Virus record (IMG/VR): IMGVR_UViG_3300027771_001853
Coordinates: 233,624-297,623 of that record
DNA: 64,000 nucleotides
Direction: 5' to 3' (one strand)
This document shows positions 7,782 to 56,948 of this stretch, piece after piece. The notes under the pieces were generated by a model. The model saw only the letters and a list, made by a program, of their open reading frames with translations, made no database searches and had not been told where the DNA came from. Position numbers and translations under genes: made by a program. How positions within the stretch are numbered: the first letter of the stretch is position 1; each line of letters opens with the position of its first letter.

Positions 7782-7836
7782 GATATATTCTATTTTAGTA
7801 AAATATACTAACGAATTACTTATAAGTCAAAATAAT

Positions 7837-8568
7837 CTAAGATAGGTCCTCTTCTAATTGTTGTAACCTTAATAAGTCTTTTTTTCTATACCCACAATCA
7901 ACCACCTCATTTTCTACAACTAAAAGTTTATCTTTTAACTCTGTATTTTCAGTTTCTTTGATTAGGTTCGTTAGTAACTTATTTAGATTGTCTTTACTTG
8001 TATCCACTTTTTCTTTGAGTTCTCCCACTTCTATGGATAGGTATTCTTTTAGTTTACCTTTGTCGGATTCACTTAAAGAAGAATATTTTTCATTATATAA
8101 CCTAGTTAAACTAGAAACTAATAATGAATGTCTTACTGTTGTTGTTTCATTAATTTGTTCTGGTTGATTTAACCACGTTACTAATTCTTTTTTTATTTCA
8201 TTATGTTTTCTTGGGTTATATGAAAAGTTTTCAAAAATAAGTTTATCTAGTTTTTGATAAATTTTTTCACTATCACCCTTATAATAAGGACTTTTTTCTA
8301 TTAGTTTATTAATATTTGTGGATTCCGCTATTAGAACTTTAGATTTTGATTTTAGTTCAGTTAGGACGTTTTCTAAGAAAATCCTTGCCTCATTTTTATC
8401 AGTGAACCTTTGTTTATCTATTTCACCATACAGTGTAAAAAATTCTCTTAGTGTTTTGGTCTTTTTTAAAGACCCCATTAATACATTAAAATTTCTTTTA
8501 AATGTGCTTTTGTTAGAATATGATTCTGTTAGAATGTCGTTGATTCCCTTTTTTATTTTACCAAACAT
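7837..8568 (-). CDS. hypothetical helical protein in head cluster
   Basis: 243-aa ORF directly downstream of portal, preceded by TATTTATA motif; several L/I-x-E sites. Confidence 0.7.
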   Translation of the reverse strand: MFGKIKKGINDILTESYSNKSTFKRNFNVLMGSLKKTKTLREFFTLYGEIDKQRFTDKNEARIFLENVLTELKSKSKVLIAESTNINKLIEKSPYYKGDSEKIYQKLDKLIFENFSYNPRKHNEIKKELVTWLNQPEQINETTTVRHSLLVSSLTRLYNEKYSSLSESDKGKLKEYLSIEVGELKEKVDTSKDNLNKLLTNLIKETENTELKDKLLVVENEVVDCGYRKKDLLRLQQLEEDLS

Positions 8569-17056: not shown

Positions 17057-17818
17057 TTATATAGTTAATATGTTATCTATAAGTTTATTCTTTAAATCAA
17101 TTAATTTTTTAATATACCCGTTTCTTCTTAGTACTTTGAAGACCAAATTCTCATAAGAATATTCACCACCAGACTCTAATCCACAGCTTCTGTATTTCTT
17201 TAATTTAGCTTTAATGTCTTCAATTTCTTTTAGGGTTTTTTCTGGTTTAAGATTCTTAGACCTTTCCACTAACCTGTCTATAGCGTCTACCCAGTTAGTT
17301 GCTTTCTCATCTAACTTTTTATCATCTATGGTTACGTGTTGGTAGGAGGGTTCAACTATCCATTTATTGTATAGTACCGAGTACACACCACTAGAATGGT
17401 GTACTTCTCTATAGTCTTGTGAGTATATTTCTACCTCATAACCGTCTATAGTAATATCGTGGGTACTATTCCATATGGTTTTTTTACTATTTAAGTAATT
17501 TCTGACAAGTTCACTATTTTCGTCTATTTCATTAAAATCTAAAATTATGTGTAGGTCAATGTCTGAAAATTTACTCCAATTAAAATTAGCTAAACTACCA
17601 GTCATAGTCACATCATACACATCACATTCTTGTGTGTCTATATCACAACTTAACTCTTCCATACCGGTATAGTCAAGAAATCTGTCAGAAACACTTAGTA
17701 GTGTGGACCTAACTTTAGGGTTCAAAGTGTATGTCCCGTCTTCCATTTCGTCCCATATTGATGGTGCTAAATGGTCCTTAGTTTTAAAGCTTTTTAGTAT
17801 CGATGATTTTACTCCCAT
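17057..17818 (-). CDS. Pol-beta superfamily nucleotidyltransferase
   Basis: TMTGSLANFNWSKFSDIDLHII = GS-x8-DxD motif, third acid in EVEIYSQD. Confidence 0.8.
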   Translation of the reverse strand: MGVKSSILKSFKTKDHLAPSIWDEMEDGTYTLNPKVRSTLLSVSDRFLDYTGMEELSCDIDTQECDVYDVTMTGSLANFNWSKFSDIDLHIILDFNEIDENSELVRNYLNSKKTIWNSTHDITIDGYEVEIYSQDYREVHHSSGVYSVLYNKWIVEPSYQHVTIDDKKLDEKATNWVDAIDRLVERSKNLKPEKTLKEIEDIKAKLKKYRSCGLESGGEYSYENLVFKVLRRNGYIKKLIDLKNKLIDNILTI

Positions 17819-17842: not shown

Positions 17843-17868
17843 AAAATGGTTGCAATTGCAACCATTTT
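17843..17868. repeat. perfect 26-bp palindrome
   Basis: AAAATGGTTGCAA-TTGCAACCATTTT, no spacer, flanked by A- and T-rich tracts. Confidence 0.9.
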
Positions 17869-18077
17869 GTTTGTTTTATTTTTAATTTGTTTACACAATA
17901 TCCCCTTCTGGGGGTTATCGATATGTTTTTTAACTATTAGTTTAGTTAATTTTTATACTCTTCCCAGTACTTAAAAGTATCTCTATCTTTTTTAGAACCG
18001 TGTATTACTGGTTTCCAAAATACAAATAAAGCTACAACTATTAATATAAATGCTATCATAATGTTTTTTTAAGTTAG

Positions 18078-18149
18078 AGCGGGTGGGTGGAACGAACCAC
18101 CGTCTACATACTGGAATGTATGTCGCTTTTATCGTTAAGCTACACCCGC
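18078..18149 (-). tRNA. tRNA-Gly-like RNA with atypical loops, no encoded CCA
   Basis: GCGGGTG/CACCCGC acceptor with U73; D stem GCTT/AAGC; anticodon arm ACATA-CATTCCAG-TATGT (8-nt loop containing TCC); T arm GGTGG-TTCGTT-CCACC (6-nt loop); host-type promoter TATATTTG at 18181-18188 (minus). Confidence 0.65.
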
Positions 18150-18216: not shown

Positions 18217-18465
18217 TTACTTCTTAATTTCGTTATATCTATACTTTTTTGATATTTCTCTATTAAAGAACTTACCCTGACTTTCTGACATCCTAAACTT
18301 AGTAAATAAATTATGTGGTACATTATGGTATTGGTATTTTCTACCACCTTTAAATGTAACTAATAGTTCACTAGTCTTAGTATCATACTCTGTAGCGAAT
18401 ATATTACTTGACGCGTACTCATTTAAAATTCTGGTTCCTTTTATTTCTTCTTTCGTTGGTTTCAT
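18217..18465 (-). CDS. KTSC domain protein
   Basis: SSNIFATEYD..TSELLVTFKGGRKYQYHNVP..LF..F..SESQGKFFNREI. Confidence 0.88.
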   Translation of the reverse strand: MKPTKEEIKGTRILNEYASSNIFATEYDTKTSELLVTFKGGRKYQYHNVPHNLFTKFRMSESQGKFFNREISKKYRYNEIKK

Positions 18466-18496
18466 ATTTAATTTTTTAAATTCTTATATTTTATAA

Positions 18497-20374
18497 TTAT
18501 TCCTTAACCTCTTCATATTCCACATCGGTAGTACTTTCTTCTACTGGTGGTTCTTGATTTACGTCCTCTTCCCCTTCTTGGGTAGTTTCGTAAAGTTTAG
18601 TACTTATTTCGTTCCAATCACTAGTTAGTTTTTCCTTTAAGGTTGTTATAGTTTCCATATTTTTACCTTCTACGGCCTCTTTTAGTTCTTTTAAAGCACT
18701 TTCTAATTTAGTTTTATCTGAGTCGTCTAATTTATCACCAAATTCTTCAATTTGTTTTTCTGTTTGGAAGATTAGTCCATCTGCCTCATTTAAAGTATTA
18801 ACATCTTCTTTCTTTTTCTTGTCTTCTTCTGCGTTTGCTTCAGCATCTGATTTCATTTTTTGGATTTCCTCATCAGACAAACTACTACCGGACTCAATCT
18901 TAATATTATGTTCTTTACCGGTACCCTTATCTTTAGCTTTAACAGTTATTATCCCATTAGCGTCAATATCAAATGTTACCTCAACCTGTGGAATCCCTCT
19001 AGGTGCTGGTGGAATGTCTGTTAGTTGGAACCTACCTAGTGTTCTATTATCTGGTGCCATAGACCTTTCTCCTTGTAAGACATGAATGTCTACCGCTGGT
19101 TGGTTATTTACCGCTGTGGAGAAAACTTCACTTTTGGACGTTGGTATTGTTGTGTTTGATTCTATTAACGTTGTCATCACACCACCCATAGTTTCTATAC
19201 CAAGTGATAGTGGGGTCACATCTAACAATAAAACATCCTTAACATCACCAACTAACACACCACCTTGTATAGCAGCTCCCATCGCTACAACCTCATCCGG
19301 ATTAACTCCTTTAGATGGTTTCTTTTTAAATAATTTTTCTACAGCTGATTGTATGATTGGTATCCTAGTTGACCCACCAACTAAAATTATCTCATCAATC
19401 TCAGTAACTTTTAAACCAGCATCTTTAATTGCCTTTCTACAAGGTGTTAAACTTTTCTTAACTAAAAATTCAACCATAGACTCAAACTTCGCTCTAGATA
19501 ATGTACGAACTAGATGTTTTGGTCCAGTAGTGTCGGCAGTTAAATAAGGTAAGTTTAGTTCTGTAGTTGTTGAGTTAGAGAGTTCTACTTTTGCTTTTTC
19601 AGCCGCTTCTCTTAGACGTTGTAAAGCAGAAGGGTCTTCACTTATATTCATACCACTTTCTTCCTTAAACTCTTCAAGTAACCAATCAACAATCACCTCA
19701 TCAAAATTATCACCACCTAAATGTGTGTCACCATTTGTGGATTTTACTTCGAACACACCACCAGATATTTCCAATATAGAAATGTCAAAAGTACCACCAC
19801 CTAAATCATAAACAGCGATAGTTTTATCTTTTGTCTCGTTTATACCGTACGCTAATGCTGCAGCAGTTGGTTCGTTGATGATTCTTAGTACGTTTAGTCC
19901 CGCGATTTCACCAGCTTCTTTTGTAGCTTGTCTTTGTGAATCATTAAAGTATGCTGGTACCGTTATTACCGCGTCTGTTACCGTTTCTCCTAGGTATTCT
20001 TCTGCTGTTTTTTTCAGATTCTGTAATATTACAGCTGATATTTCTTGTGGAACGTATGTTTTACCATCTACAACCACATTAACATTTTCGTCACTACCTT
20101 TTTTTACTGTATAAGCCATTTTTTTAGCTTCTTTACTTACCTCATCAAACTTACTACCTATAAAACGTTTTACAGAGTAAATTGTATTTGTTGGGTTTGT
20201 TACTGCTTGTCTTTTTGCTGGGTCCCCAACAACTCTATCACCATCTTTAAACGATATAACCGAAGGTGTTGTTCTTTTACCCTCCGAATTAACAATTATT
20301 GTGGGTGACCCACCTTCTACTACTGAAACACATGAGTTTGTAGTACCTAAATCTATTCCAATTACTTTTGTCAT
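18497..20374 (-). CDS. dnaK: Hsp70 chaperone DnaK
   Basis: [62 protein letters not shown]. Confidence 0.98.
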
Positions 20375-20375
20375 A

Positions 20376-20837
20376 TTAACTTATTTTTATTTGTTTTTTA
20401 TTATTACTATTTTTTACTAATTTAGGTATAACTATACCTAAAACACCATTTTCTACCTTTGCTTTAATATTGTCGATATCAACATTATCTGGTAACCTAT
20501 AATCCAACTCTAGTTCTGTATTATAGAACTCTCTTCTTAAATAAGTTATTTTCTCCGCTTTACTGTCATATAAGTCATGATGCTCTTCAGCTACTGACGT
20601 TACCACTAAAACCCCATTTTCTACTATTACCGTGATATCGTTTTTTGTTAGTCCTGGGGCTTGCATTTCTAACATATAAGATTTGTTAGTTTCTAACAAA
20701 TTACTCCTATAACTACCTAACCCACCATAACTCGAATCTTTAGTTTTGTTAAAGTTTTCATCTTGTTGTTCATGAAGGTTATCAGTAAAGAAATCATCAA
20801 TGACTCTAGTTAAATCTGCTTTTGTTTTGTAATCCAT
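20376..20837 (-). CDS. small heat-shock protein (Hsp20, alpha-crystallin domain)
   Basis: [19 protein letters not shown] and [25 protein letters not shown]; start reassigned to MDYKTK. Confidence 0.92.
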
Positions 20838-20916
20838 AATTTTATTCTTTTTTATAAATTTATTAATTTTTATTCTTTTATTCAAGTAATTTATATTACT
20901 TTTACATTACCTTTAA

Positions 20917-20933
20917 TACAATTACTGTACCAA
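20917..20933 (-). promoter_or_regulatory. sigma54-like -24/-12 element upstream of hsp20-dnaK
   Basis: Minus strand TTGGTACAGTAATTGTA = GG-N10-GT, one change from TGGCAC-N5-TTGC. Confidence 0.4.
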
Positions 20934-20954
20934 AAGCAAATATATAAAAAAATA

Positions 20955-20969
20955 ATGACATAATGTCAT
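20955..20969. promoter_or_regulatory. operator-like inverted repeat between divergent hsp20/dnaK and clpC
   Basis: ATGACAT-A-ATGTCAT, with an extra ATGTCA half-site about 20 nt downstream. Confidence 0.5.
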
Positions 20970-21025
20970 ATTAGGAAGTAAAAATGTCACTAGGTTAATA
21001 TTTTTACATTTTATAAAACATTTTA

Positions 21026-21033
21026 TATATTTG
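21026..21033 (+). promoter_or_regulatory. Bacteroidota RpoD-type -7 element for clpC
   Basis: TATATTTG matches TAnnTTTG, 24 nt upstream of ATG. Confidence 0.65.
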
Positions 21034-21057
21034 TTTAAACAATTTAAATTATAATAT

Positions 21058-23106
21058 ATGAAAGAAATAATAAAATCGTCATTCTCGGGTATCGAAGAAG
21101 ATGGAGCTCAAAGTAAAAAACCAAAGAAAAGTAAATCAGAGAAAACATCTAGAACACCCATATTAGATAACTTTTCTAGAGATTTAATAAAATTAGCTAG
21201 TGAAGGAAAATTAGACCCTGTGGTCGGTAGACAAGCTGAAATAACTAGAGTAGCACAAATATTATGTAGGAGAAAGAAAAATAATCCTGTTTTGATAGGT
21301 GGTCCTGGTTGTGGTAAAACAGCTTTGGCTGAGGGATTGGCACTTAAAATACATAGTGGTAAATGCCCACGTAACTTATTAGATAAAAAAATAGTTGCAT
21401 TAGAACTAACTAGTTTAGTTGCTGGTACAAAATACAGGGGACAATTCGAAGAAAGAATGAAAGCTGTATTGGAGGAATTAAGGGATAATCCAGATATTAT
21501 AATTTTTATAGACGAATTACATACTGTCGTAGGTACAGGAAATTCATCTGGTTCACTAGATGCAGCTAATATCTTTAAACCAGCTTTAGCTAGAGGTGAA
21601 CTACAATGTATAGGAGCTACCACATTAGATGAGTATAGGGAGAATATAGAAAAGGATGGTGCATTAGAAAGAAGGTTCCAAAAAGTTATGGTAGAACCAA
21701 CCACTGTAGAGGAAACATTAAAGATATTAACCAACCTTAAATCGAAATACGAAGACCACCATAAAGTGGTTATTAGTAACGAAATACTAAAACTTTGTGT
21801 TCAATTAGCTGAAAGATATATAACACATAGAGAATTTCCTGATAAAGCTATCGATATAATGGATGAGGTTGGTGCTAAGGTACAAGTAGATATAGAGTTC
21901 CCAGATGAAATAGAAAATTTACGTAAGAGCATTGGTAAGTTGGGTGATGAGAAAAAATCAGTAGTTAAGTCACAACAATATGAAAAGGCAGCACACCTTA
22001 GAGATAAGGAATTAAAATTAATAACTAAGTTGGATGATTTAAAACTTGCGTGGGAAATAGAAATGGAGGAGCAAAGGACAGTTGTAAGTGTGGACGATTT
22101 ATACACTGTGGTTTCTCAGATGACAAAAATACCATTAGCTAGATTATCTGAAAATGAAATGGCTAGTTTAATAGAATTAGAATCACAGTTAAAAAACTAT
22201 GTAGTTGGTCAAGATGAAGCTATTGAAAAAGTTTGTAAAGCTATAAGAAGAAATAGAGTTGGTATTAGAGATGGTTCTAAACCTATAGGTACGTTTATGT
22301 TTTTAGGTCAAACAGGTATAGGTAAAACACATTTAGCTAAATCACTAGCAAAAGAAATATTTGGTTCTGAAGATTCTCTTATTAGGGTAGATATGTCAGA
22401 ATATCAAGAAAAATTTAACACTTCTAGGTTGATAGGTTCTCCTCCTGGTTACGTTGGGTACAACCAAGGTGGTCAATTAACTGAAGCCGTTAGAAATAAA
22501 CCCTACAGTGTTGTATTATTTGACGAGATAGAGAAAGCACATCCAGATGTTTTTAACGTACTTCTACAGGTGTTCGATGATGGGCATATGACTGATGGTA
22601 TGGGTAGAGTTATTAATTTTAAAAATACGTTAATAATTATGACATCCAATATTGGTGTTAAGAAACTACAGGAGTTTGGTAGTGGTATAGGTTTTGATAC
22701 CTCCGCTAGATTAGAGAAAAAAGAAGAAGCGATGAAAGATATTATAGCATCACAATTAAAAAAATCTTTTAGTCCAGAATTCCTAAACAGGGTAGACGAC
22801 ACTATTGTATTTAACCAGTTAGATGAAAAGAACATAGAAGGTATTGTAGAAATGGAACTTAACAACCTTAAGAAAAGATTATTAGATAAAGATTACAATA
22901 TAACGTTCAATGCTTCGGTTAAGAAATTTATAGCTAAAGAATCGTATGATGAAAAGTTTGGTGCAAGACCATTAAAAAGAATGATTCAAAATAAAATAGA
23001 GGACTTTATTTCAGAAGAAATTTTAAAAGGTAAAATAAAAGAAAAAAGCCGTTATTCTATTAGTATGGATAAAAAGACTGAGAAACCTAAATTAAAGAGT
23101 CTTTAA
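21058..23106 (+). CDS. clpC: ClpC-type AAA+ unfoldase lacking the N-terminal Clp-repeat domain
   Basis: GGPGCGKT, IFIDELH, AGTKYRGQFE, UVR-like QQYEKAAHLRDKE, GQTGIGKT, PPGYVGY, LFDEIEK, ClpP-docking GIGF; only about 30 residues before the first ATPase-proximal helix. Confidence 0.9.
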   Translation: MKEIIKSSFSGIEEDGAQSKKPKKSKSEKTSRTPILDNFSRDLIKLASEGKLDPVVGRQAEITRVAQILCRRKKNNPVLIGGPGCGKTALAEGLALKIHSGKCPRNLLDKKIVALELTSLVAGTKYRGQFEERMKAVLEELRDNPDIIIFIDELHTVVGTGNSSGSLDAANIFKPALARGELQCIGATTLDEYRENIEKDGALERRFQKVMVEPTTVEETLKILTNLKSKYEDHHKVVISNEILKLCVQLAERYITHREFPDKAIDIMDEVGAKVQVDIEFPDEIENLRKSIGKLGDEKKSVVKSQQYEKAAHLRDKELKLITKLDDLKLAWEIEMEEQRTVVSVDDLYTVVSQMTKIPLARLSENEMASLIELESQLKNYVVGQDEAIEKVCKAIRRNRVGIRDGSKPIGTFMFLGQTGIGKTHLAKSLAKEIFGSEDSLIRVDMSEYQEKFNTSRLIGSPPGYVGYNQGGQLTEAVRNKPYSVVLFDEIEKAHPDVFNVLLQVFDDGHMTDGMGRVINFKNTLIIMTSNIGVKKLQEFGSGIGFDTSARLEKKEEAMKDIIASQLKKSFSPEFLNRVDDTIVFNQLDEKNIEGIVEMELNNLKKRLLDKDYNITFNASVKKFIAKESYDEKFGARPLKRMIQNKIEDFISEEILKGKIKEKSRYSISMDKKTEKPKLKSL

Positions 23107-26100
23107 ATTGTCATCACAACAACCCTTAACTTTTCTACAGAAACAACACCAATAATCCTAATTGTGTTATAGTTCATTATAGTAATGGTCACAGACGCGT
23201 CTCCAAGTAGTTTCATATCTCCACTAGCCCCATCGGTACTACCAATTAAGGAAATTAACACATCTCTACTATTAAGGTTGTGTGTCACATAAATCGAAGA
23301 ACCCACACCTAGGATGAAAGTGTTAAAATGGTCGGTAGTATATTTTCTAGCTAGTCCCATCTCGGTACTACCTGATGAAAGTGTACTACTTGGTGATGGG
23401 ATTTTTATTGAACCTGAACCTTGTGTATTTGCTGAGTAGACTGTTGACCCTGTTATCCACCCATTTGATATACTTATCCCTCTATCATCAGGGGTATTAA
23501 GCTCGACGTTACCAATAGTAGCTTTTAATACTAGTTTAGTACCTTTTACTTCTGATATTATCTCACTGTCACCAAATTTAGTTTTACCTTCTTCCGATTC
23601 TATTGTACTTTTACCACCTAGAGTGATATATGAACTTGCGTGTACACTTGTGGCTGAAACAGTATTACCGGTTAAGAATGTAGCCGTTATACCACCAATC
23701 ACATCTAGTTTACCATCTTCACCACCACCTTTCAGTCCAGAATTTAATGTTAATACACCATCTACAGTTGTATCACCACTAATGTTAGTTGTCCCACTAA
23801 ATGTTACCGGAACTCGTCCAAAACCTACAGAGTATGGCCAAATAACAACTATATTATCATCTGCTCTAAATAAGGGAGTACCAGGGTATGTGGTAGCGGT
23901 TATTGTTAAACCACCATTAATTGTAACATTTTTATTAAATTTACTATCCTCAGAGAATGAAGTCACACCAGAAACTCTTAATGCCCCATCTAAAATAGTG
24001 TTTCCTGTTACTTCAAATTGAGTGGGGGTACTAGCGTTTCTAAATCTAGCGATAAGTAGTTCACTTCCTTTTTCATCGCCATCAGGTGACCCTTGTATCC
24101 TTAAACTATCCTTGGTGGTACCATTATTATTTATTGTTAATCTACTACTAAAGTCTTGGTTAGACTCGTACCCACCAAAACCAGACGGTGTTCCAACCAT
24201 AACACTATCACCACTAATTGTTAATGTTTGATTTGTTGAACTACCTGTGAAGATACCAAATGGTGTATAACTACCATGACCAACGGCTATCCCAGAAGGT
24301 GATAGTTTTATCTGAGCTAGATTATACAATGGGTTTATGTTTTCAGATGTGGATTTTACCACTAAACCTGCTCCCACATTACTTCTACCTAAGAAATGAG
24401 CTACCACACTATTTTTACATGCCGCACTTAACGCTGGTTGTAAATCACTAGCTTCGATAGAAAGTGCTGCTGATGGGATGAAAGACAATCGTTGAGGGGT
24501 TACAGCTAAACCACTAGTTATTTGTGTTGTACTGGCTAGAATAATATTAGTACCATCTGGTCCTTCACCGGTTGCACCACAAGCGGTGATGTTTGCTGTG
24601 ACCAAACTACAAGCACTTAACACCCCTAAGACTTGGGTATTACCCGATATCAGACCACCGGAAGTGGTTGAGGACCTGGAGGAACTTGAGGTTTTAAAGT
24701 CTTGGAAATCCTTTACCTTAATAGCTCCGAACCCACCCGGTTTATTAGGGTCTAACTCTCTAACTAGAATTTGTGTTAACGTTGTTGAGGTCATTGCTGA
24801 CTGTACGTTTAATAAATTTGTGTATGACGTATCAGCACTATAAGCGAATATATCTTGTCCCGCAAGTATACTACTGTTGACCGCACTTGGTGCTATATGA
24901 TGGTTATACCCAGCTAATACCGCTGAGTTATTTCCAGTAATATGGTTGTTTCTACCTGCAAGTACGGATGACGAATTACCGTTAATAAGATTTTTTTGCC
25001 CTCCTAATATTGTAGAATATTGTGAAAGGGTACTAGCACTATTTAAAGAACCATTAAGTATTGTGTTGTATTGTTGTATGTTGGATATTGAATTGGCGGT
25101 AATAACTATTAGGTTTTGATTACCGTTAACTATTGTATTGTATGAGTTCTGGGTGGAAGTTCTGACTGGGTCAGCACCAGGTACCATCTGTACAGTATTT
25201 GTCCTACCAATAATGTTGTTGGTATTACCATTAATTATTGAATTACTTTTTGGTTGGTACGATGTTATTGTCTGATTTTGGCCATTGAGTATCTGGTTAT
25301 TTTGACTTTCTTTCAGACCACCCTTAGTATCGATAGTATTATAGTAACCATTTAGTATGGTCCCATATGATGTGGCTCCTGACTTTATGCGGTTATTTAC
25401 TCCAGTTCCTATAAGATTAGCCGTCCATCCACTTATCGCATTACCATATCCACCGGCAATTACATTACCTACACCACCCGCACGTCCACCGGAAGCCGTA
25501 CTAAAACCAAATTGTCCTGATATTTTATTCCAAGCTCCACTAATAATAGTTGATATGGAACCACTAAGAATGTGGTTACCGGTACCACCTACAACTGTAT
25601 TACCAATATAAACTGATGCATTTGAACCTCCAGCCCAGAATTTGTCTTTAGGTCTTATTAGGTTGGTACTCCCTATGGTACCCCCACTAAGCATATCACC
25701 ACCACCAAGAATTTGTGACCACTCAGAGGTTATAACGTTTTCATTAGGTCCTCCTGGTGATGTCGGGTTCCATGAATTTATCGGTCCTGCCCATTTATAT
25801 GGTGAAAGAAAGTTATTACATGTATCTGCTGTAACTGTTGTCCCCGAATTAGTATATAAATAAAGAGTACACCCTATTGTATGTGCAGAAACAACATAAC
25901 TATCTCCACTCATAAATTGTGGCTGTACTGAACCTGGTACTGGTGCCCATCTTGCTCTACCATCTGCATTTACACCAGCTAGGAATACGTTTGGACTTCC
26001 GGAATAGGCTGGACTATTAGGGATTATTATATTATTAGCTGCACCTCCATGATAATGGAATGGTCTGTCACCATCCCCAGTGTCTGTCCACACATTTAAT

Positions 26101-28529
26101 CCGTGTGTGTATGTTGTTTGGGAGGTTCTAGCTGTTATTGCGTTACCCCCTAATATTGCTGATGATGATGCTGTGTTAAATATAGTATTTCCAGTACCAC
26201 CTAGTATGTGACCACCATCAGCTAAAACTGTACTACCTGAACTACTTAATATAGTCGCAAATTTAGCACCACCAACATAATTACGAGTACCAGAAACATG
26301 ACTAAATGTAGTAGCCGAATTTAGATTATTATGATGACCGTGAATATTATTCCAACTAGAATTGTATACAAAATTTGTAATACCAAAAATTGTATTACCA
26401 GAACTACTTATTTCTAAATTACTTAACCCTTTTAAATGTGAATGTTCTCCCGCTCCTACACCACCAATAATGTTATTACTTTGACCTAACAGACTTGAAA
26501 AATTCCCAGAGGATAATCTCAGATTACCTTGTCCCATGAAAAAACCATGTTTACCCCCAAAAGTTATGTTGCCAACTCCGAACATAAGGTTGTACCCACC
26601 ATTAGTAGAGTTAAGTGCAGCATTGGATGAACCCCCTAGTATGTTGGTGTAGGTTTCAAAGTTATTATTCATACTCCCTCCTTGTACGTTACCATACAAA
26701 CCAGTAGTTTGGTTAAGTCCTAAAACTGGCATTATTGAATTGGTTCCAATCCCAAACTTATAAGGTCCTGCATTAGAACAAGTGTCAGCGGTTAAGGTTG
26801 TACCTGAATTAGTTACACCATACCAAGTACACCCACTTGTGTAGGCAGTTAACATATACACGTCAGAACCACTAAAACTAGTTATCCCACTTGGGATTAG
26901 ATTTGCTAAATTTTTCCACTTTGCGTGACCGTCATTATCATGAGAAACTAAAACTCTACCTAATCCTTGGTCTGCGTTTATACCGTGATATTGAAGCCAG
27001 TTACCGTTTGGTGTGTTTCCAGCTACATCAGAATTAACATTTAACCCTCTTAAATATGTTGTTTGAGCCGACATAGCGGTTAATTGTGAGGCCCCTATAA
27101 TCGCGGATGATATTGCTGTTTTTTCAATAGTATTTCCACTACCACCAACAATAACAACATCACTATTTTCATGTACCCTATTAAGAGTACCACCTACTAT
27201 GACTGAACTCTCACTACCATCCAAATCATTATTATTACCACCCACTATTGCACTATAGGTAGAAGCTGAAATTTCATTCTGAGTACCCCCTAGTATAGCA
27301 CTTCTAGTACTACCACTTATAACGTTAACTCCACCACCACCTATAAAACTTGCAGTACTGTATTTAAATTTATTAGCAGTACCTCCGACTATAACCGACT
27401 GTAGGCTCCCCGACATCACACTGTTAATACCACCGACTATAGCTCCGTATGCACTACCGTGTAAAAAATGGTTACTACCACCAACAATAGCACTGTAATA
27501 TGAAGGGACTCTAACAGTAGCTATTATCTTAGAACTAGTGGAACCAAGAATACTACTATATGATTCACCGGATATGGTATTTAATATACCACCAGCTATA
27601 ACATTATGTTGGTCATTTGAACCGGCTACTATTTTATTTTGTTTTCCAGCAAAAATACCTGATGAAGTGAACCCACCTTGTATAATATTACTATTACCAG
27701 CAGCGATTACATTGTCTTCTGAATTTATGCCCGACATAACTATATTATGTCTACCACCACCAATAACACTATATTTAGCGTTGGCTTGGTTTGCTCCTAG
27801 TTTTGGTTCTATAGATTGTAGTGCTTTTCCATAACGATATGGTCCAAAATCTTCACACGTATTAGCACTAAACGTTTGGTGTCCTGTATTAGAGGAATAA
27901 ACTAAGAATGTCGTACATCCTGTCGTATACCCACTTACTAAGAATGTTGCACCAGTTAAATTAACAGGTATAATATCATTCCCTCTTTTTACGCTATTAG
28001 TGGTACTATCCCAAATTAAATTGTAATCACCACCAACAGCAACATCCCTAACCATTAAATCACCAGCAATATCTAAAGTCGCTAATGGAGCTAACTTTCT
28101 AATACCTACAGTACCACCACTAGTTATTACTAATTGATGGTCTTGGGCAAAAGTAGTTCCAGTGGCGATAGTATATGTGTTGTAACTTCCCGTACCATTA
28201 CTAAAATCTACACCTGCTGCCCATATCGCGTTACCGACACCTATATCGCCTTTCCTATGTACTATGTAGGAATCTGTTTCATTTCTTGTTTGGAAGTTAA
28301 GTATAGCGTCACCCCCATCAGATACTATGGCTGCTTCTGAAGAGGCACCATCTCTAAATAATTCTAAATCCCAATCTGGTAAACTAGTACCCATACCAAT
28401 TTTCCCACCACTTCTAACGATAAAGTCAGCTATCCCAGTTCCTGAGTGTACAACACTAAATCCAGTGTATGAATCATTATCACCTTGACCCCAAACCCTT
28501 AAAGAGCCATATAAATCATTAATTCCCAT
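23103..28529 (-). CDS. giant fibre/adhesin-like protein (1808 aa) with Hep/Hag-like SxIxGGxxNxI repeats
   Basis: Dozens of about 14-15 aa repeats (e.g. SAILGGTQNEI, SVIVGGTLNRV), G(I/M)GT..P...L repeats near the N-terminus, C-terminal THNLNSRDVLISL domain. Confidence 0.8.
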   Translation of the reverse strand: MGINDLYGSLRVWGQGDNDSYTGFSVVHSGTGIADFIVRSGGKIGMGTSLPDWDLELFRDGASSEAAIVSDGGDAILNFQTRNETDSYIVHRKGDIGVGNAIWAAGVDFSNGTGSYNTYTIATGTTFAQDHQLVITSGGTVGIRKLAPLATLDIAGDLMVRDVAVGGDYNLIWDSTTNSVKRGNDIIPVNLTGATFLVSGYTTGCTTFLVYSSNTGHQTFSANTCEDFGPYRYGKALQSIEPKLGANQANAKYSVIGGGRHNIVMSGINSEDNVIAAGNSNIIQGGFTSSGIFAGKQNKIVAGSNDQHNVIAGGILNTISGESYSSILGSTSSKIIATVRVPSYYSAIVGGSNHFLHGSAYGAIVGGINSVMSGSLQSVIVGGTANKFKYSTASFIGGGGVNVISGSTRSAILGGTQNEISASTYSAIVGGNNNDLDGSESSVIVGGTLNRVHENSDVVIVGGSGNTIEKTAISSAIIGASQLTAMSAQTTYLRGLNVNSDVAGNTPNGNWLQYHGINADQGLGRVLVSHDNDGHAKWKNLANLIPSGITSFSGSDVYMLTAYTSGCTWYGVTNSGTTLTADTCSNAGPYKFGIGTNSIMPVLGLNQTTGLYGNVQGGSMNNNFETYTNILGGSSNAALNSTNGGYNLMFGVGNITFGGKHGFFMGQGNLRLSSGNFSSLLGQSNNIIGGVGAGEHSHLKGLSNLEISSSGNTIFGITNFVYNSSWNNIHGHHNNLNSATTFSHVSGTRNYVGGAKFATILSSSGSTVLADGGHILGGTGNTIFNTASSSAILGGNAITARTSQTTYTHGLNVWTDTGDGDRPFHYHGGAANNIIIPNSPAYSGSPNVFLAGVNADGRARWAPVPGSVQPQFMSGDSYVVSAHTIGCTLYLYTNSGTTVTADTCNNFLSPYKWAGPINSWNPTSPGGPNENVITSEWSQILGGGDMLSGGTIGSTNLIRPKDKFWAGGSNASVYIGNTVVGGTGNHILSGSISTIISGAWNKISGQFGFSTASGGRAGGVGNVIAGGYGNAISGWTANLIGTGVNNRIKSGATSYGTILNGYYNTIDTKGGLKESQNNQILNGQNQTITSYQPKSNSIINGNTNNIIGRTNTVQMVPGADPVRTSTQNSYNTIVNGNQNLIVITANSISNIQQYNTILNGSLNSASTLSQYSTILGGQKNLINGNSSSVLAGRNNHITGNNSAVLAGYNHHIAPSAVNSSILAGQDIFAYSADTSYTNLLNVQSAMTSTTLTQILVRELDPNKPGGFGAIKVKDFQDFKTSSSSRSSTTSGGLISGNTQVLGVLSACSLVTANITACGATGEGPDGTNIILASTTQITSGLAVTPQRLSFIPSAALSIEASDLQPALSAACKNSVVAHFLGRSNVGAGLVVKSTSENINPLYNLAQIKLSPSGIAVGHGSYTPFGIFTGSSTNQTLTISGDSVMVGTPSGFGGYESNQDFSSRLTINNNGTTKDSLRIQGSPDGDEKGSELLIARFRNASTPTQFEVTGNTILDGALRVSGVTSFSEDSKFNKNVTINGGLTITATTYPGTPLFRADDNIVVIWPYSVGFGRVPVTFSGTTNISGDTTVDGVLTLNSGLKGGGEDGKLDVIGGITATFLTGNTVSATSVHASSYITLGGKSTIESEEGKTKFGDSEIISEVKGTKLVLKATIGNVELNTPDDRGISISNGWITGSTVYSANTQGSGSIKIPSPSSTLSSGSTEMGLARKYTTDHFNTFILGVGSSIYVTHNLNSRDVLISLIGSTDGASGDMKLLGDASVTITIMNYNTIRIIGVVSVEKLRVVVMTI

Positions 28530-28530
28530 A

Positions 28531-31500
28531 TTATCCTATTATTACAGTTTTTATATTATCTTTATTCATAGTAAGCTCTACAGTTATAGTATTTAATGTT
28601 ACATATACAATCGTTGCATCGATTCTCTGACCTGCTTCTTTCCAAAGATTCACTACCACATCTAGTGTATCTAAATTATGTGTTATTGTTTCAGCTACAT
28701 TCGCTGTATAATTTCTTGTGTCCACAAATTTCTGTGGTACATTCCACGCGTATAATGTAGTTGCTGATATTGTTCCAGCTGTTAAACCACACATATATGT
28801 GGTATTAGGTTGTGTAGCTGTTAAATTGTTACACCCTATAATCGCTGACGATACAGCAGTATATTCAATCGTGTTTCCAGTACCACCAACAATATGACCA
28901 AAGTTGCCATCTACTGTATTACCGGAACCACCTAATATTGTCCCATACCCACCGGAAGGTCCAATACTATTACTTCTACCATTAAGGATTGTAGCGTAGT
29001 CTCGCATGATAGAATTATTAGTACCATTACCAATCATACTAAAATATCCTCCGTTCAAATGGCCGATTGTATTACCGGAACCACCTAAAATAACATCATA
29101 CCCTAGACCGGTTGCCCGATTACCAAGTCCACCCAATATGGATTTATGTCCAGAATTAACCACATTTCCCCAAGCTCCTGATGTATAGTCGTCAGTTATA
29201 ACATTACTATCACCACCAACAATACTACTATTAGAGATTCTTCTTATATCGTTTTGTTTACCTGCACCAATAAAATTATAGTGACCACCACCAACTATTA
29301 GATTACTCATTCCACCTACTATAGCACTAACCTTTGTTCTTCCTGTGTAATCTGTTTTTTGTGTTATAAAATTAAGTTCACCACCACCTATAAATGAACT
29401 GGTACTACCTGTAATGGTATTTCTATACCCACCAACTACTACTGAGGTGTCTGCTGATTGGATGATATTGTTATATCCGGCACCTATAAACACACCGGAC
29501 GTAGAATTGTTACTTCTAGAACCAGAGTAAGGACTATTAATTAAATTATGTTGTCCAGCAACAATTACTGAACTATTAGATTCACCACTTATTGAGTTAT
29601 TTCTTCCACCTAAAATAGCAACTGTATTTGCTGATATAATCTGGTGGTGGTGCCCATTTAAAATCGTACTGTAACTTGACCCTGATGTTATCCTATGTAG
29701 TGAACCGTTACCAATTAAATTATAACCACCCTCTTTACCTGGTCTTAATTGTGCTTTATTACCAGTTATTCTATTTTGTTTACCGTTTATAATTGTACTC
29801 CATTGTGCACCATCTTCTAAATAATTGGCGTCACCATTTAAAATAGTACCACCACGAACTGAAGCGTTATACCCACTATAACCATTTAAAATGGTTCTAT
29901 GGTTGTAAGGTTTCATAGAATCAGTATAGGTATTCCAGAAGGTGGTGTTTACAATTTTATTTTCTTGTCCATTACCTATGAAGTCATGTATTCCTTCGAT
30001 ATCATTACTGATACCATTAACAACTGAACCAAACGTACCCGGAGCTCTATTAAATAACCCCCCTTGTACTGTAGAGAAATTCCCCACTGTGGTATTTGTA
30101 CCTAAAACTGGTTTTATTGAGTTTGTGCCCGCTCCATATTGGTAAGGTCCTAGATTAGAACATGTATTTGCGGTTAATACCGCTCCTTGACATAAGGTTC
30201 CACCTGTTAGTGTCATATAAACCGTACACCCACTTGTGTAAGCGGAGGCCATATAACACCCACCAGACACGTTAGTTATGCCACTAGGTATAAATGGTAA
30301 ACTTATCCATTTTGCGTGACCATCATCAGTATTAGACATTAAGAATTTACCATTCCCTGGTGAAGCATAATTACCATGGTACCTAAATGGTCTGTGTTCT
30401 GTATTAGATACCCCACCTAGTGCTTGGGTTATGTCAGTATGAGCATCCAAACCTCTTGTATATGTTGTTTCGGAAGAATAAGCGATTAATCCCACACCGG
30501 CTGAGATGGTTGACGCACTAGCTGTAGATGATATTGTGTTTGCACTCGAGTTTAATATAACACCGTACACAGCATTAACCTTATTAAGTTTACCCGCCAA
30601 AATACTACCGTGTTCTCTAAATACTTTATTTTTAGTACCACCAACAATTGAAGCTGTTGATGCACTTATTTCATTCTGGTAACCACCTAATATAGAAGAG
30701 TAACCCCTACCCCCTTCTTTTACCAAAAAGCCATCTGTTAGACCACTTGTAATAACGTTTTTATAACCACCACCTACAAACCCCCAACCAATATCTCTTA
30801 TTACGTTCGATTGACCACCCGCTATAGTTGATTTAGTAGCTCCACTTATTAAATTTGTTTGTCCACCAGCAATCGTATTCCCAAACCTATCATTAACAGT
30901 AGGGTTACCACTCGACCCAACGTAAGGGTTTAATATTTTATTAGATACCCCACCTAGTATGGCAGATGTAGACGCTGAAGATATTAAGTTATCTTTTCCA
31001 TTTACGATAACACTATTACTACTAGCTACATTGAGTCCTACCCCAAGAATACCACTACCAGCTATAGTATTACCAGAACCACCACCTATAGAAGCGTTTG
31101 TATTATCTGGGCTAATTACATTAAGGTACCCACCAGCGATATTAGAATACTGACCTCTGGCGATATTCTCCCCTAAACGTGGTCTAATTCCGGTGTAGTC
31201 CGGTGCAGTCTCATTAAAGACGTAAGGTGTCTCACCCGATAATTGTAAATTCCATTGTACACCGTCACTTCTATGAATATTAATAATACTTGGATGTCCA
31301 CCTAGGTTGGTACCCCATGATGTGTCGTCCACATATAAATCAGTAAATACTGTAGCTGAAGACGATACTGTACCCCACATTAGTTGGTTACTACATCCAC
31401 CTGTTTGTGATGCTGGTGGAGCTAAAACTAAAGTTTGTCCAGTGGTTGCTGGACCATACATTGGGAATGTATACCCTGAAGTGGCTTTTTCAAATTTTAT

Positions 31501-31866
31501 ACCACAGTCCCCACATGGTGTTATTGTACCCGCAGTTAAAGCTGAATCACAAAATTCAGGAAACACACTAAGAGTTAGAGTACCATCACCAAATGAATCA
31601 GTAATTGTAATACCAGAACCACCAATTAAACTATAAAAATTTAATGTACCGTTATCTGCAGCATAAGTTTTGCTATGGTAAACCCCGAAAGTACCTGCAG
31701 GACCAACATTAAGACCAATGGTGTCGTTAATCTTTTGATTTAACATCAAAAGACTCGTATCTAATTCGGCCCAACTTAGGACAGAACCTTTTGGTATTGC
31801 TTGTCCAGCTATGGGGGACGCATTTGAACGAGTAAAAAATTGACTCGGATATGGGGTTAAAGGCAT
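28531..31866 (-). CDS. fibre/adhesin-like protein (1111 aa), paralog of 23103..28529
   Basis: Same repeats and hinge (IPSGIT..SG...AYTSGCT...TANTCSN.GPY..G.GTNSI.PVLG); N-terminal KGSVLSWAELD; C-terminal THNLDTLDVVVNL. Confidence 0.8.
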   Translation of the reverse strand: MPLTPYPSQFFTRSNASPIAGQAIPKGSVLSWAELDTSLLMLNQKINDTIGLNVGPAGTFGVYHSKTYAADNGTLNFYSLIGGSGITITDSFGDGTLTLSVFPEFCDSALTAGTITPCGDCGIKFEKATSGYTFPMYGPATTGQTLVLAPPASQTGGCSNQLMWGTVSSSATVFTDLYVDDTSWGTNLGGHPSIINIHRSDGVQWNLQLSGETPYVFNETAPDYTGIRPRLGENIARGQYSNIAGGYLNVISPDNTNASIGGGSGNTIAGSGILGVGLNVASSNSVIVNGKDNLISSASTSAILGGVSNKILNPYVGSSGNPTVNDRFGNTIAGGQTNLISGATKSTIAGGQSNVIRDIGWGFVGGGYKNVITSGLTDGFLVKEGGRGYSSILGGYQNEISASTASIVGGTKNKVFREHGSILAGKLNKVNAVYGVILNSSANTISSTASASTISAGVGLIAYSSETTYTRGLDAHTDITQALGGVSNTEHRPFRYHGNYASPGNGKFLMSNTDDGHAKWISLPFIPSGITNVSGGCYMASAYTSGCTVYMTLTGGTLCQGAVLTANTCSNLGPYQYGAGTNSIKPVLGTNTTVGNFSTVQGGLFNRAPGTFGSVVNGISNDIEGIHDFIGNGQENKIVNTTFWNTYTDSMKPYNHRTILNGYSGYNASVRGGTILNGDANYLEDGAQWSTIINGKQNRITGNKAQLRPGKEGGYNLIGNGSLHRITSGSSYSTILNGHHHQIISANTVAILGGRNNSISGESNSSVIVAGQHNLINSPYSGSRSNNSTSGVFIGAGYNNIIQSADTSVVVGGYRNTITGSTSSFIGGGELNFITQKTDYTGRTKVSAIVGGMSNLIVGGGHYNFIGAGKQNDIRRISNSSIVGGDSNVITDDYTSGAWGNVVNSGHKSILGGLGNRATGLGYDVILGGSGNTIGHLNGGYFSMIGNGTNNSIMRDYATILNGRSNSIGPSGGYGTILGGSGNTVDGNFGHIVGGTGNTIEYTAVSSAIIGCNNLTATQPNTTYMCGLTAGTISATTLYAWNVPQKFVDTRNYTANVAETITHNLDTLDVVVNLWKEAGQRIDATIVYVTLNTITVELTMNKDNIKTVIIG

Positions 31867-53432: not shown

Positions 53433-53555
53433 TAAAATAAATTTAGATAAACAGAATCGTATGTTACGGTTTGGTTTTGGAAAACATAACGGAACCTGGT
53501 TCATAAGAATAGACCTTTGGTACTTCGGAATAAGGATATACAAAATATAATAAAT

Positions 53556-56947: not shown

Positions 56948-56948
56948 A

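What the first reader, a model, noticed from the sequence alone, without database searches (positions are those of the whole stretch)
18078..18149. tRNA-Gly-like RNA with intact acceptor identity but abnormal D, anticodon and T loops
Seen: all four stems pair perfectly and G1-C72, C2-G71, G3-C70 and U73 are present, yet the D loop (AACGATAA) lacks GG, the anticodon loop has 8 nt (CATTCCAG) and the T loop has 6 nt (TTCGTT); it has its own TAnnTTTG promoter. Established: those acceptor features are bacterial GlyRS determinants; staphylococcal non-proteinogenic tRNA-Gly species lack the D-loop GG and normal T-loop; 8-nt anticodon loops occur in +1 frameshift suppressors. Inference: a non-ribosomal glycyl donor, a decoy for anticodon nucleases or uncharged-tRNA sensors, or a frameshifting tRNA. 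Perfect stems argue against simple decay.
Basis: partly seen in the sequence, partly recalled or inferred. Interest (0 to 1): 0.63.

Follow-up and report, generated by a model that had tools for sequence, protein, structure and literature searches.

The report
Non-decoding glycine tRNA of marine phages
A giant marine phage carries a conserved tRNA that still looks chargeable with glycine but is misshapen for the ribosome; its closest relatives sit directly behind phage mom genes, whose enzyme takes glycine from tRNA to modify DNA, so it is probably a dedicated non-ribosomal glycine carrier.

Summary
On the minus strand (18149 to 18077) lies a perfect cloverleaf with the bacterial glycine identity set (G1-C72, C2-G71, G3-C70, U73, C35, C36). 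It has an 8-nt anticodon loop, a 6-nt T loop and no GG in the D loop. Independent assemblies show the same loop lengths, so this is not a sequencing error.

The window is the end of a 297-kb T4-like marine phage contig. The element belongs to an RNA family. 17 variants in related jumbo phages keep the 8-nt loop CAUUCCAG while the D and T loops drift and stems change by compensation.

In one clade of phage Mom genes, at least 74 of 80 loci have a tRNA-Gly-like gene 0-30 nt after mom. Acceptor pairs 1-3, U73 and C74 are fixed there and pairs 4-7 covary. Half carry the same 8-nt loop, and others lack U33 or the elbow. A second Mom clade gave 1 of 81.

Mom was recently shown to transfer glycine from Gly-tRNAGly to DNA adenine. 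Best reading: a ribosome-excluded glycyl carrier, analogous to staphylococcal non-proteinogenic tRNAGly. No mom gene was found in the window or near its closest relatives, so the acceptor enzyme here is inferred, not shown. I found no report of the mom-tRNA linkage.

The parts
18077..18149 (-). tRNA-Gly-like RNA gene: G1 at 18149, discriminator U73 at 18078, conserved C74 at 18077; no encoded CCA
18111..18118 (-). 8-nt anticodon loop CAUUCCAG (C32, extra A, U, U34 C35 C36, A37, G38). C32 and G38 can pair, leaving a 6-nt loop
   Evidence: Identical in 15 of 16 parsed main-clade variants and in 18 distinct mom-linked relatives. Kept in loci fetched through proteins, not through the RNA pattern
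18091..18096 (-). 6-nt T loop UUCGUU between T stem GGUGG (18097-18101) and CCACC (18086-18090)
   Evidence: In relatives the loop varies (CUUGGA, UUCGAC, UUUGUU, 8-nt CUCACACU) while the stem is kept or compensated to GGUGA/UCACC
18129..18136 (-). D loop AACGAUAA without G18-G19; D stem at 18137-18140 and 18125-18128
   Evidence: 3-nt deletion variants at 18130/18132 in other assemblies
18079..18085 (-). 3' acceptor strand CACCCGC pairing with 18143-18149; holds C70, G71, C72 of the glycine identity set
   Evidence: Invariant in all main-clade variants. Identity set as listed in PMC9976931
18181..18188 (-). TATATTTG, a Bacteroidota-type TAnnTTTG promoter-like motif 32 nt upstream of G1
   Evidence: Present in the window lineage, L075, L080 and L091 only
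17946..18059 (-). 37-aa hydrophobic small ORF directly downstream of the RNA; same start in L054/L056/L071/L080/L096
   Evidence: no family assigned
17843..17868 (.). 11-bp palindromic hairpin with T runs on both strands (bidirectional terminator-like). It would close a unit of promoter, RNA and small ORF
   Evidence: 2 found against 0.2 expected

Best explanation
The element is a functional, phage-encoded tRNA-Gly derivative that has kept what glycyl-tRNA synthetase needs and lost what the ribosome needs.

Proposed pathway (all steps inferred): it is transcribed from its own AT-rich promoter or by read-through. RNase P trims the 5' end. A 3' nuclease trims the other end and the host CCA-adding enzyme adds CCA, which is not encoded. 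Host GlyRS then charges it through G1-C72, C2-G71, G3-C70, U73, C35 and C36.

Three features should keep it out of decoding: the 8-nt anticodon loop closed by C32-G38, the missing G18-G19, and the 6-nt T loop with no canonical elbow. The glycine would instead go to a Gly-tRNA-dependent transferase. The most likely one is a Mom-type GNAT that glycylates N6 of adenine in phage DNA, which then rearranges to 6-NcmdA and protects against restriction. A private donor would spare the translational Gly-tRNA pool.

Shown here: the structure, its conservation, family membership by shared derived characters, and tight linkage of the relatives to mom. Inferred: expression, processing, charging, exclusion from EF-Tu and the ribosome, and the identity of the acceptor enzyme in this phage.
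For: (1) Real, selected structure. Cloverleaf z = -4.96 and Rfam tRNA 48.4 bits. Main-clade variants keep acceptor and D stems unchanged while D and T loops vary. Compensatory changes occur: GGUGG/CCACC to GGUGA/UCACC, and A29-U41 to G29-C41.

(2) The 8-nt loop CAUUCCAG is constant, also in loci fetched through neighbouring proteins (L186, L187, L191, L192).

(3) Relatives with the same loop lie 0-30 nt after a Mom gene (PF25680, E 1e-47 to 1e-51; 35% identical to Mu Mom, E 3e-23).

(4) Of 80 loci of that Mom clade, 70 have a match to the RNA model directly after mom. ARAGORN adds 4 more. Some are convergent to mom, so the linkage does not depend on orientation.

(5) Control: 81 loci of a second Mom clade gave 1 match.

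(6) In 57 distinct non-main sequences, pairs 1-3 are G-C, C-G, G-C (56 of 57) and U73 and C74 are invariant. Pairs 4-7 each show 3-6 pair types, with 227 of 228 cells paired. C35-C36 is always kept. 29 have 8-nt loops, 10 of the 28 7-nt loops lack U33, 22 lack GG, and 26 lack a TTCRANN T loop. This matches the bacterial glycine identity set (PMC9976931) without the constraints of decoding.

(7) Mom transfers glycine from Gly-tRNAGly to dA in DNA (PMC13219725).

(8) Precedent for an unlinked arrangement in a jumbo phage: the 245-kb contig of L189 has a Mom gene, and a family-type tRNA-Gly with the bulged-A T stem lies elsewhere on it (L063). Mom genes are reported as common in jumbo phages (PMC7824862).
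Against: No Mom homologue was found in the 64-kb window, in about 20 kb to its left, or within about 10 kb of the RNA in any main-clade locus (Mom HMM on six-frame translations; Pfam tables). Searches for relatives of a jumbo-phage Mom did not return this contig, but 233 kb of the contig were not examined.

In its own clade the RNA sits beside DnaK/KTSC, or beside a DUF2828+vWA 'RNA-binding' gene and a normal tRNA-Arg(UCU). That is a tRNA/RNA-repair neighbourhood, not a DNA-modification one.

Full-length identity to mom-linked relatives (78%) is no higher than to ordinary phage tRNA-Gly (77%). Kinship therefore rests on shared odd characters, which could be convergent. The window copy also lacks the bulged-A T stem typical of many mom-linked members.

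There is no RNA evidence. Whether RNase P, the CCA-adding enzyme and GlyRS accept a tRNA without a canonical elbow was not tested.
Confidence: 0.5

Rival explanations
1. It is still a decoding tRNA-Gly(UCC) that supplies GGA/GGG codons for an AT-rich phage. Its unusual loops would be tolerated, or selected because they escape a host anticodon nuclease.
For: T4-like phages typically carry tRNA-Gly(UCC) and tRNA-Arg(UCU) (own knowledge). Relatives have a normal tRNA-Arg(UCU) 1.2 kb upstream. GGA plus GGG make up 37% of glycine codons in the window. The Rfam tRNA score is above threshold.
Against: Three independent departures from universal tRNA features (8-nt loop, 6-nt T loop, no G18-G19) are fixed across the clade. 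The neighbouring tRNA-Arg stays canonical. The T and D loops vary freely in sequence and length, which is not expected if the elbow were used by the ribosome. A C32-G38 Watson-Crick pair is very unusual in decoders (own knowledge).
Confidence: 0.13
2. It is a tRNA-like partner or substrate of the phage's RNA-repair and quality-control module (a DUF2828+vWA protein, possibly Ro60/TROVE-like), comparable to the tRNA-like Y RNAs encoded next to Ro60.
For: In at least 12 related loci the order is RNA, 92-aa gene, 484-aa DUF2828+DUF7788 protein (phrog_850 'RNA-binding protein'). That protein family lies next to RNA ligases, PolyA_pol, PNKP-like genes, tmRNA and tRNA arrays in other jumbo phages. 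Y RNAs with tRNA-like domains next to Ro60 are known in bacteria and phages (PMC4201824; PMC7824862).
Against: The window has no such protein. In other phages the same protein sits beside ordinary tRNA genes, so adjacency is not specific to this RNA. The RNA is a plain 72-nt cloverleaf without a Ro-binding stem, and Rfam gave only the tRNA hit. No TROVE signal was found at sequence level. This reading does not explain the fixed glycine identity set or the mom linkage of relatives.
Confidence: 0.1
3. It is a decoy or sponge for a host defence that targets tRNA-Gly or Gly-tRNA-Gly. Examples are GNAT toxins of the TacT/AtaT2 type, which read U73 and G71, or an anticodon nuclease.
For: Acceptor-end identity (U73, G71) is exactly what such toxins read (PMC9976931). 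The RNA keeps those positions invariant. Phage tRNAs that counter tRNA-targeting defences are known (own knowledge).
Against: There is no defence or anti-defence context in the window. An 8-nt loop is a poor mimic for an anticodon nuclease target. The mom linkage of relatives has a simpler explanation.
Confidence: 0.08
4. It is a +1 frameshift-suppressor (quadruplet-reading) tRNA used for programmed recoding at GGA-N.
For: 8-nt anticodon loops characterise sufD, SufA6, SufB2 and SufJ (own knowledge; 10.1101/2020.12.31.424971 listed). Loop variants UUCC, AUCC and UACC exist in the family.
Against: 330 GGA codons (96 of them GGAA) occur in 44 window ORFs and are not avoided. No pair of long ORFs is joined by a +1 shift at GGA-N; the overlaps hold ordinary start codons. 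The elbow needed on the ribosome is degenerate. Relatives with 7-nt loops lacking U33 fit loss of decoding, not quadruplet reading.
Confidence: 0.04
5. It is a decaying tRNA-Gly pseudogene with no function.
For: It is not detected by the default tRNA finder. 13 of 16 main-clade variants have a mismatch at pair 29:41.
Against: All other stem pairs are intact in all variants, and compensatory changes occur. The loop CAUUCCAG is invariant while other loops change. The element is present in 20 runs from 16 studies and in several genomic contexts.
Confidence: 0.05

Closest known systems
Non-proteinogenic tRNAGly of Staphylococcus (glycine donors for FemXAB peptidoglycan cross-bridges)
   Same: A tRNA-Gly(UCC) lineage that keeps GlyRS identity but has lost universal tRNA features: no G18-G19, aberrant T loop, changes that lower use in translation. 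It serves a GNAT-fold aminoacyl-tRNA transferase (PMC7826273; PMC9976931).
   Different: The Staphylococcus genes are chromosomal bacterial genes; this one is phage-encoded. The staphylococcal species keep 7-nt anticodon and T loops and escape EF-Tu through T-stem pairs 49-65 and 51-63. Here loop lengths change (8 and 6 nt) and the presumed acceptor is DNA, not peptidoglycan. Neither the acceptor nor EF-Tu avoidance is shown here.
Mom / Gly-tRNAGly DNA momylation of phage Mu (Silva et al. 2026, PMC13219725)
   Same: The relatives of this RNA are encoded directly after Mom-family genes (PF25680). Mom needs Gly-tRNAGly, and the authors suggest it probably reads mainly the acceptor end.
   Different: Mu has no tRNA gene and uses host isoacceptors. 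The paper speaks of exploiting a host resource and does not mention phage tRNA genes. No mom gene was found in this window.
Ordinary phage-encoded tRNA-Gly(UCC), as in T4-like phages
   Same: Same anticodon and acceptor identity. It is carried by a T4-like phage (Gp23, Gp20, prohead protease), next to tRNA-Arg(UCU) in relatives.
   Different: 8-nt anticodon loop, 6-nt T loop, no G18-G19; not called by ARAGORN with default settings.
+1 frameshift suppressor tRNAs (sufD, SufA6, SufB2, SufJ)
   Same: The anticodon loop is expanded by one nucleotide. The extra base lies 5' of the anticodon, as I recall for SufJ.
   Different: Those are laboratory mutants of otherwise canonical tRNAs. Here the elbow is degenerate, and no frameshift targets were found.
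YrlA-type bacterial and phage Y RNAs (tRNA mimics bound by Ro60)
   Same: A tRNA-like non-coding RNA encoded next to an RNA-binding vWA-containing protein in relatives.
   Different: This is a full cloverleaf with a glycine identity set and no Ro-binding stem. There is no Rfam Y RNA hit, and the neighbouring protein is not shown to be Ro60-like.

Membership tests
Canonical bacterial elongator tRNA-Gly | Cloverleaf scored as tRNA by a covariance model | tested here: met
   RF00005 48.4 bits against a gathering score of 29
Canonical bacterial elongator tRNA-Gly | 7-nt anticodon loop with U33 | tested here: not met
   8-nt CAUUCCAG, confirmed in independent assemblies
Canonical bacterial elongator tRNA-Gly | Elbow: G18-G19 in the D loop and a 7-nt T54-Psi55-C56 T loop | tested here: not met
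   D loop AACGAUAA and T loop UUCGUU of 6 nt. ARAGORN with default settings finds nothing
Canonical bacterial elongator tRNA-Gly | GlyRS identity set U73, G1-C72, C2-G71, G3-C70, C35, C36 | tested here: met
   All present in the sequence; set as in PMC9976931. Actual charging was not tested
   Window GCGGGUG/CACCCGC-UC; family statistics
   Identical loop in 18 distinct mom-linked sequences
   No Mom in the window or in main-clade loci. The neighbours are KTSC and a 37-aa ORF
   The window T stem is a perfect 5 bp; the bulge is seen in L048, L060, L099 and L126
Staphylococcal-type non-proteinogenic tRNA-Gly (functional class) | Loss of D-loop GG and of the TTC T-loop triplet, with GlyRS identity retained | tested here: inconclusive
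   GG is lost and identity is retained. The T loop keeps UUC but is one nucleotide short; relatives have CUUGGA or UUUGUU. Features of the class from PMC7826273
Staphylococcal-type non-proteinogenic tRNA-Gly (functional class) | Weak EF-Tu binding and use by an aminoacyl-tRNA transferase | not testable with these tools
   Needs binding and transfer assays
+1 frameshift suppressor tRNA | 8-nt anticodon loop | tested here: met
+1 frameshift suppressor tRNA | Genes that need a +1 shift at the cognate codon | tested here: not met
   No such ORF pair in the 64 kb; GGA is abundant. The rest of the genome was not examined
YrlA-type Y RNA | Ro-binding stem plus tRNA-like module, encoded next to a Ro60 orthologue | tested here: not met
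   Plain cloverleaf with only a tRNA hit in Rfam. No DUF2828/Ro-like gene in the window

The most novel reading that the evidence does not exclude
Phages encode private, ribosome-excluded glycyl-tRNAs whose job is to feed glycine to DNA-hypermodifying Mom enzymes. The copy in this jumbo phage is an unlinked member of that system, or it feeds a still unknown Gly-tRNA-dependent transferase. This would be the first tRNA dedicated to DNA modification. It would also be a natural example of how a tRNA is taken out of translation: an expanded or C32-G38-closed anticodon loop, loss of U33, loss of the elbow, and a bulged T stem.
Probability: 0.4. Interest if true: 0.85.

Novelty: new variant of a known kind. 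Interest (0 to 1): 0.7.

Why it matters
Mom-type DNA momylation was only recently shown to draw on Gly-tRNAGly, and the published work assumes the host pool is used. A phage-encoded donor placed directly after mom in most loci of one Mom clade would change that picture. It suggests the phage insulates translation from DNA modification. It also gives a ready enzyme and co-substrate pair for biochemistry, and shows which tRNA features Mom and GlyRS need (acceptor end, C35-C36) and which only the ribosome needs.

It is also a practical warning for annotation. These genes are missed or labelled 'tRNA-???' by standard tRNA finders, and one lies unannotated in a cultured Psychrobacter phage. For the window itself, the element marks a jumbo phage as likely to run a Gly-tRNA-dependent side pathway that is still to be found.

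Tried and rejected
(1) First viral DNA scan: I miscounted the spacer, so the zero result is meaningless. It was corrected.

(2) Sequencing or assembly error: rejected (and identical copies in several IMG and TARA contigs).

(3) +1 frameshift targets: all long ORF pairs with overlaps were listed. None needs a shift at GGA-N. Codon usage shows no avoidance.

(4) Search for Mom in this phage, all negative:
- tblastn and a Mom HMM over six-frame translations of the window and all main-clade loci.
- A walk of 20 kb to the left of the window, which found a sugar/glycosyltransferase island.
- 10-kb flanks in L186, L191 and L192.
- Relatives of a jumbo-phage Mom.
233 kb of the contig remain unseen, so absence is not shown.

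(5) The 253-aa downstream gene as a tRNA-specific enzyme: it is a Pol-beta-fold nucleotidyltransferase (GS...DxD motif; model pLDDT 81). It has only weak, generic fold matches to ANT, MNT and CD-NTase. It also occurs in relatives that lack the RNA. No specific link.

(6) DUF2828 protein as Ro60: no PDB sequence hit and no TROVE Pfam hit. Its structure was not predicted.

(7) RNA evidence: no RNA run holds the element. One possible RNA run covers only neighbouring genes of a relative.

(8) Cultured phages: no close copy, only ordinary tRNA-Gly at 77%.

(9) A match in Methylophilales phage Melnitz looks like an ordinary tRNA-Trp and was dropped.

(10) Literature: no paper in the held library links mom to a phage tRNA gene or describes natural 8-nt-loop tRNA-Gly in phages.

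Full report
OBSERVATION

The minus strand from 18149 to 18077 reads as a 72-nt cloverleaf plus one conserved C. Its parts are:
- acceptor GCGGGUG/CACCCGC
- D arm GCUU-AACGAUAA-AAGC
- anticodon arm ACAUA-CAUUCCAG-UAUGU
- variable AGAC
- T arm GGUGG-UUCGUU-CCACC
- then U73, C74

Every stem pairs. The minimum-free-energy fold is this cloverleaf (-29.8 kcal/mol, z = -4.96). The Rfam tRNA model scores it at 48.4 bits against a threshold of 29. The whole-window run with Rfam's fast filters missed it.

ARAGORN with default settings finds no tRNA in the 64 kb. With relaxed settings it reports an undetermined Glu|Gly tRNA with a 6- or 8-nt anticodon loop.

The loop lengths are not an artefact. Contigs assembled from two other studies cover the element without any difference or gap. 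The variants seen elsewhere are substitutions at 18102, 18108 and 18121 and 3-nt deletions in the D loop. 20 runs from 16 studies hold the stretch.

The motif TATATTTG lies at 18188-18181. It is conserved only in the nearest relatives.

A 37-aa hydrophobic ORF (18059-17946) and a terminator-like hairpin (17843-17868) follow the RNA.

WHERE IT SITS

The window equals the last 64 kb of a 297,623-bp viral contig. Its genes include:
- T4-type major capsid protein, portal, prohead protease and terminase
- DnaK, Hsp20 and ClpB
- a tmRNA
- a DNA ligase and a pyruvate phosphate dikinase
- a protein with a CHU_C type IX secretion sorting domain, which points to a Bacteroidota host

The RNA lies between a KTSC-domain gene and a 253-aa Pol-beta-fold nucleotidyltransferase. 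Phages whose DnaK is 76-80% identical have KTSC directly followed by that transferase, with no RNA between them. So the RNA plus the small ORF is a lineage-specific insert.

THE RNA FAMILY IN JUMBO PHAGES

DNA-pattern scans, a covariance model built from two sequences (R1) and look-ups through neighbouring proteins gave 17 distinct variants with the same acceptor stem. Sixteen of these were parsed.

Acceptor and D stems never change. The anticodon loop is CAUUCCAG in all parsed variants but one, which has CAUACCAG.

The D loop keeps AA-NNNN-AA but varies in sequence and length. The T loop is 6 nt in most (UUCGUU, CUUGGA, UUCGAC, UUUGGA, UUCAUU) and 8 nt in two.

The T stem changes from GGUGG/CCACC to GGUGA/UCACC. 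Pair 29:41 is A-U, G-C or mismatched.

Loci reached through proteins rather than through the RNA pattern carry the same 8-nt loop. This removes the ascertainment worry for that feature.

This is the pattern of a selected structure whose elbow is not under constraint.

The genomic contexts differ:
- DnaK, KTSC, RNA
- or a 497-aa gene, a 62-aa gene, RNA, a 92-aa gene, then a DUF2828+vWA protein, with a normal tRNA-Arg(UCU) 1.2 kb upstream

THE MOM LINK

A more distant set shares the D arm and the identical 8-nt loop but has different, covarying acceptor stems. In every case it lies just after a 220-245-aa gene preceded by a ParB-like gene.

That gene is a Mom family member: PF25680, E 1e-47 to 1e-51, phrog 'Mom-like DNA modification protein', and 35% identity to Mu Mom.

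Using an alignment of these Mom proteins I fetched the 80 best of at least 422 relatives. The RNA model found a match starting 0-30 nt after mom in 70 of them. ARAGORN added four more. Nine of the 70 are convergent to mom.

As a control, 81 loci of a second Mom clade (459 kb) gave one match.

A cultured Psychrobacter phage (OQ059336) has ParB, Mom, an unannotated 66-nt degenerate copy and then the small terminase.

WHAT THE FAMILY CONSERVES

These figures are for 57 distinct sequences outside the jumbo clade:
- Pairs 1-3 are G-C, C-G, G-C in 56.
- U73 and C74 are invariant.
- Pairs 4-7 each take three to six pair types, with 227 of 228 cells paired.
- C35, C36 and mostly A37, G38 are fixed.
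- 29 have an 8-nt loop (CAUUCCAG, CAAUCCAG, CAUACCAG, CACUCCAG).
- Of the 28 7-nt loops, ten lack U33 (CAUCCAG, CCUCCAG, CAACCAG).
- 22 lack GG in the D loop, and 26 lack a TTCRANN T loop.
- Many have a one-base bulge in the 3' strand of the T stem.

C32 and G38 can form a Watson-Crick pair in nearly all. To my knowledge this is very unusual in decoding tRNAs.

The invariant positions are exactly the experimentally defined bacterial glycine identity set (PMC9976931). The lost positions are those used by the ribosome and, in the T stem, by EF-Tu.

Syntenic pairs such as L057 (canonical D and T loops) and L060 (degenerate) show that the elbow was lost repeatedly.

MECHANISM

Silva et al. (PMC13219725) showed three things. 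Mu Mom transfers glycine from Gly-tRNAGly to N6 of adenine in double-stranded DNA, and the product rearranges to 6-NcmdA. All E. coli tRNAGly isoacceptors work. The authors suggest that Mom probably reads the acceptor end.

They treat the donor as a host resource and note possible costs to translation. Neither the paper nor its preprint mentions phage tRNA genes.

The simplest reading of the linkage is that this Mom clade brings its own glycine carrier. GlyRS can charge it, but it is progressively unfit for the ribosome. This is the same logic as the non-proteinogenic tRNAGly that feed Fem transferases in Staphylococcus (PMC7826273).

THE WINDOW COPY

It shares the derived characters of the family but not the linkage.

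No Mom homologue occurs in the window, in 20 kb to its left, or near the RNA in its closest relatives. Two searches seeded with a jumbo-phage Mom did not return this contig. However, 233 kb of the contig were not seen.

A 245-kb jumbo contig does carry both a Mom gene and an unlinked family-type tRNA-Gly. Mom genes are reported as common in jumbo phages (PMC7824862).

I therefore hold 'non-ribosomal glycine carrier' at about 0.5, and 'for a Mom enzyme in this phage' somewhat lower.

RIVALS

- A working decoder is unlikely. There are three fixed anomalies and freely varying elbow loops, while the neighbouring tRNA-Arg stays canonical.
- A frameshift suppressor is unlikely. GGA is frequent, and no split gene was found in the window.
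- A Ro60/Y-RNA-like role is suggested by the DUF2828+vWA neighbour in relatives. But that protein also sits beside ordinary tRNAs, tmRNA and RNA-repair genes in other phages. It is not shown to be Ro-like.
- A decoy for toxins that target Gly-tRNA-Gly is possible but has no support in the gene context.
- Simple decay is contradicted by the substitution pattern.

NOVELTY

The kinds of thing are known: dedicated non-proteinogenic tRNAGly, phage tRNAs, and Mom's use of Gly-tRNA. New, as far as the held literature shows, are the near-obligate mom-tRNA gene pair in one Mom clade, the recurrent routes out of decoding, and the unlinked jumbo-phage clade to which this window belongs.

Noticed in passing
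window 32903-33312 (+) and 33340-33603 (+): A phage-encoded tmRNA (Rfam 89.6 bits) is followed at once by an 88-aa basic ORF. That ORF is 73% identical to the 92-aa gene that follows the tRNA-like RNA in related phages. So this small gene always sits just 3' of a tRNA-shaped RNA gene. It has no family hit.
   Followed up: partly
L179 2162-2227 (OQ059336.1, Psychrobacter phage vB_PmaS_Y8A, about 7786-7851): An unannotated 66-nt degenerate tRNA-Gly-like element (GCGUGUA...UACACGC-UC, reduced D arm) lies between the Mom homologue (annotated as hypothetical) and the small terminase gene of a cultured phage. The model score is weak (11.3 bits).
   Followed up: partly
L099-L178 (80 Mom loci) against L193-L273 (81 loci of a second Mom clade): The tRNA-Gly-like gene follows mom in at least 74 of 80 loci of the ParB-linked Mom clade, but in only 1 of 81 loci of the other clade. 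The linkage is clade-specific.
   Followed up: yes
L189 10001-12878 (Ga0255047_10000002, 245,874 bp): In a jumbo phage a Mom gene (PF25680) lies 700 nt downstream of the DUF2828+vWA gene. The same contig has a tRNA-Gly(ACC) with the bulged T stem elsewhere (L063 6254-6326).
   Followed up: partly
L188, L190, L192 (loci around DUF2828+DUF7788 genes): The very large, mostly viral DUF2828+vWA family (7567 hits) sits next to tRNA arrays, a tmRNA, Rnl1- and Rnl2-type RNA ligases, PolyA_pol/CCA-type nucleotidyltransferases and a PNKP-like phosphatase. This looks like an RNA-repair or tRNA quality-control module.
   Followed up: partly
window 17057-17818 (-): A 253-aa protein with the Pol-beta nucleotidyltransferase signature (TGS...SDIDLH). 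The model has pLDDT 81, with only generic matches to ANT, MNT and CD-NTase enzymes. It is conserved after KTSC also in phages without the RNA.
   Followed up: yes
window 17946-18059 (-); also L088 just after its RNA: A small hydrophobic ORF (37 aa here) directly follows the RNA in the window lineage. A different small hydrophobic ORF follows it in L088.
   Followed up: no
window 18217-23106: A chaperone cluster of KTSC, DnaK (Hsp70, E 1.8e-258), Hsp20 and a divergently transcribed ClpB-like AAA+ protein in a phage. The DnaK is about 70% identical at DNA level to those of 630-735-kb uncultured phages.
   Followed up: no
window 23103-31866 (-): Two very large adjacent ORFs (1808 and 1111 aa) without any Pfam family.
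   Followed up: no
window 53517-56030 (+), 56417-57491 (-): A full-length pyruvate phosphate dikinase gene in a phage, and two small proteins with CHU_C (type IX secretion sorting) and PKD-like domains, which suggest a Bacteroidota host.
   Followed up: no
L183 and L185 (20 kb left of the window on related contigs): A long island of glycosyltransferases, a sulfotransferase, an asparagine-synthase-like amidotransferase, sugar epimerases/dehydratases and aminotransferases, next to dUTPase.
   Followed up: no
window 18078-18149: Method note: the Rfam tRNA hit (48.4 bits, above the gathering score) is absent from the whole-window gathering run and appears only with permissive filters on a short stretch.
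   Followed up: yes
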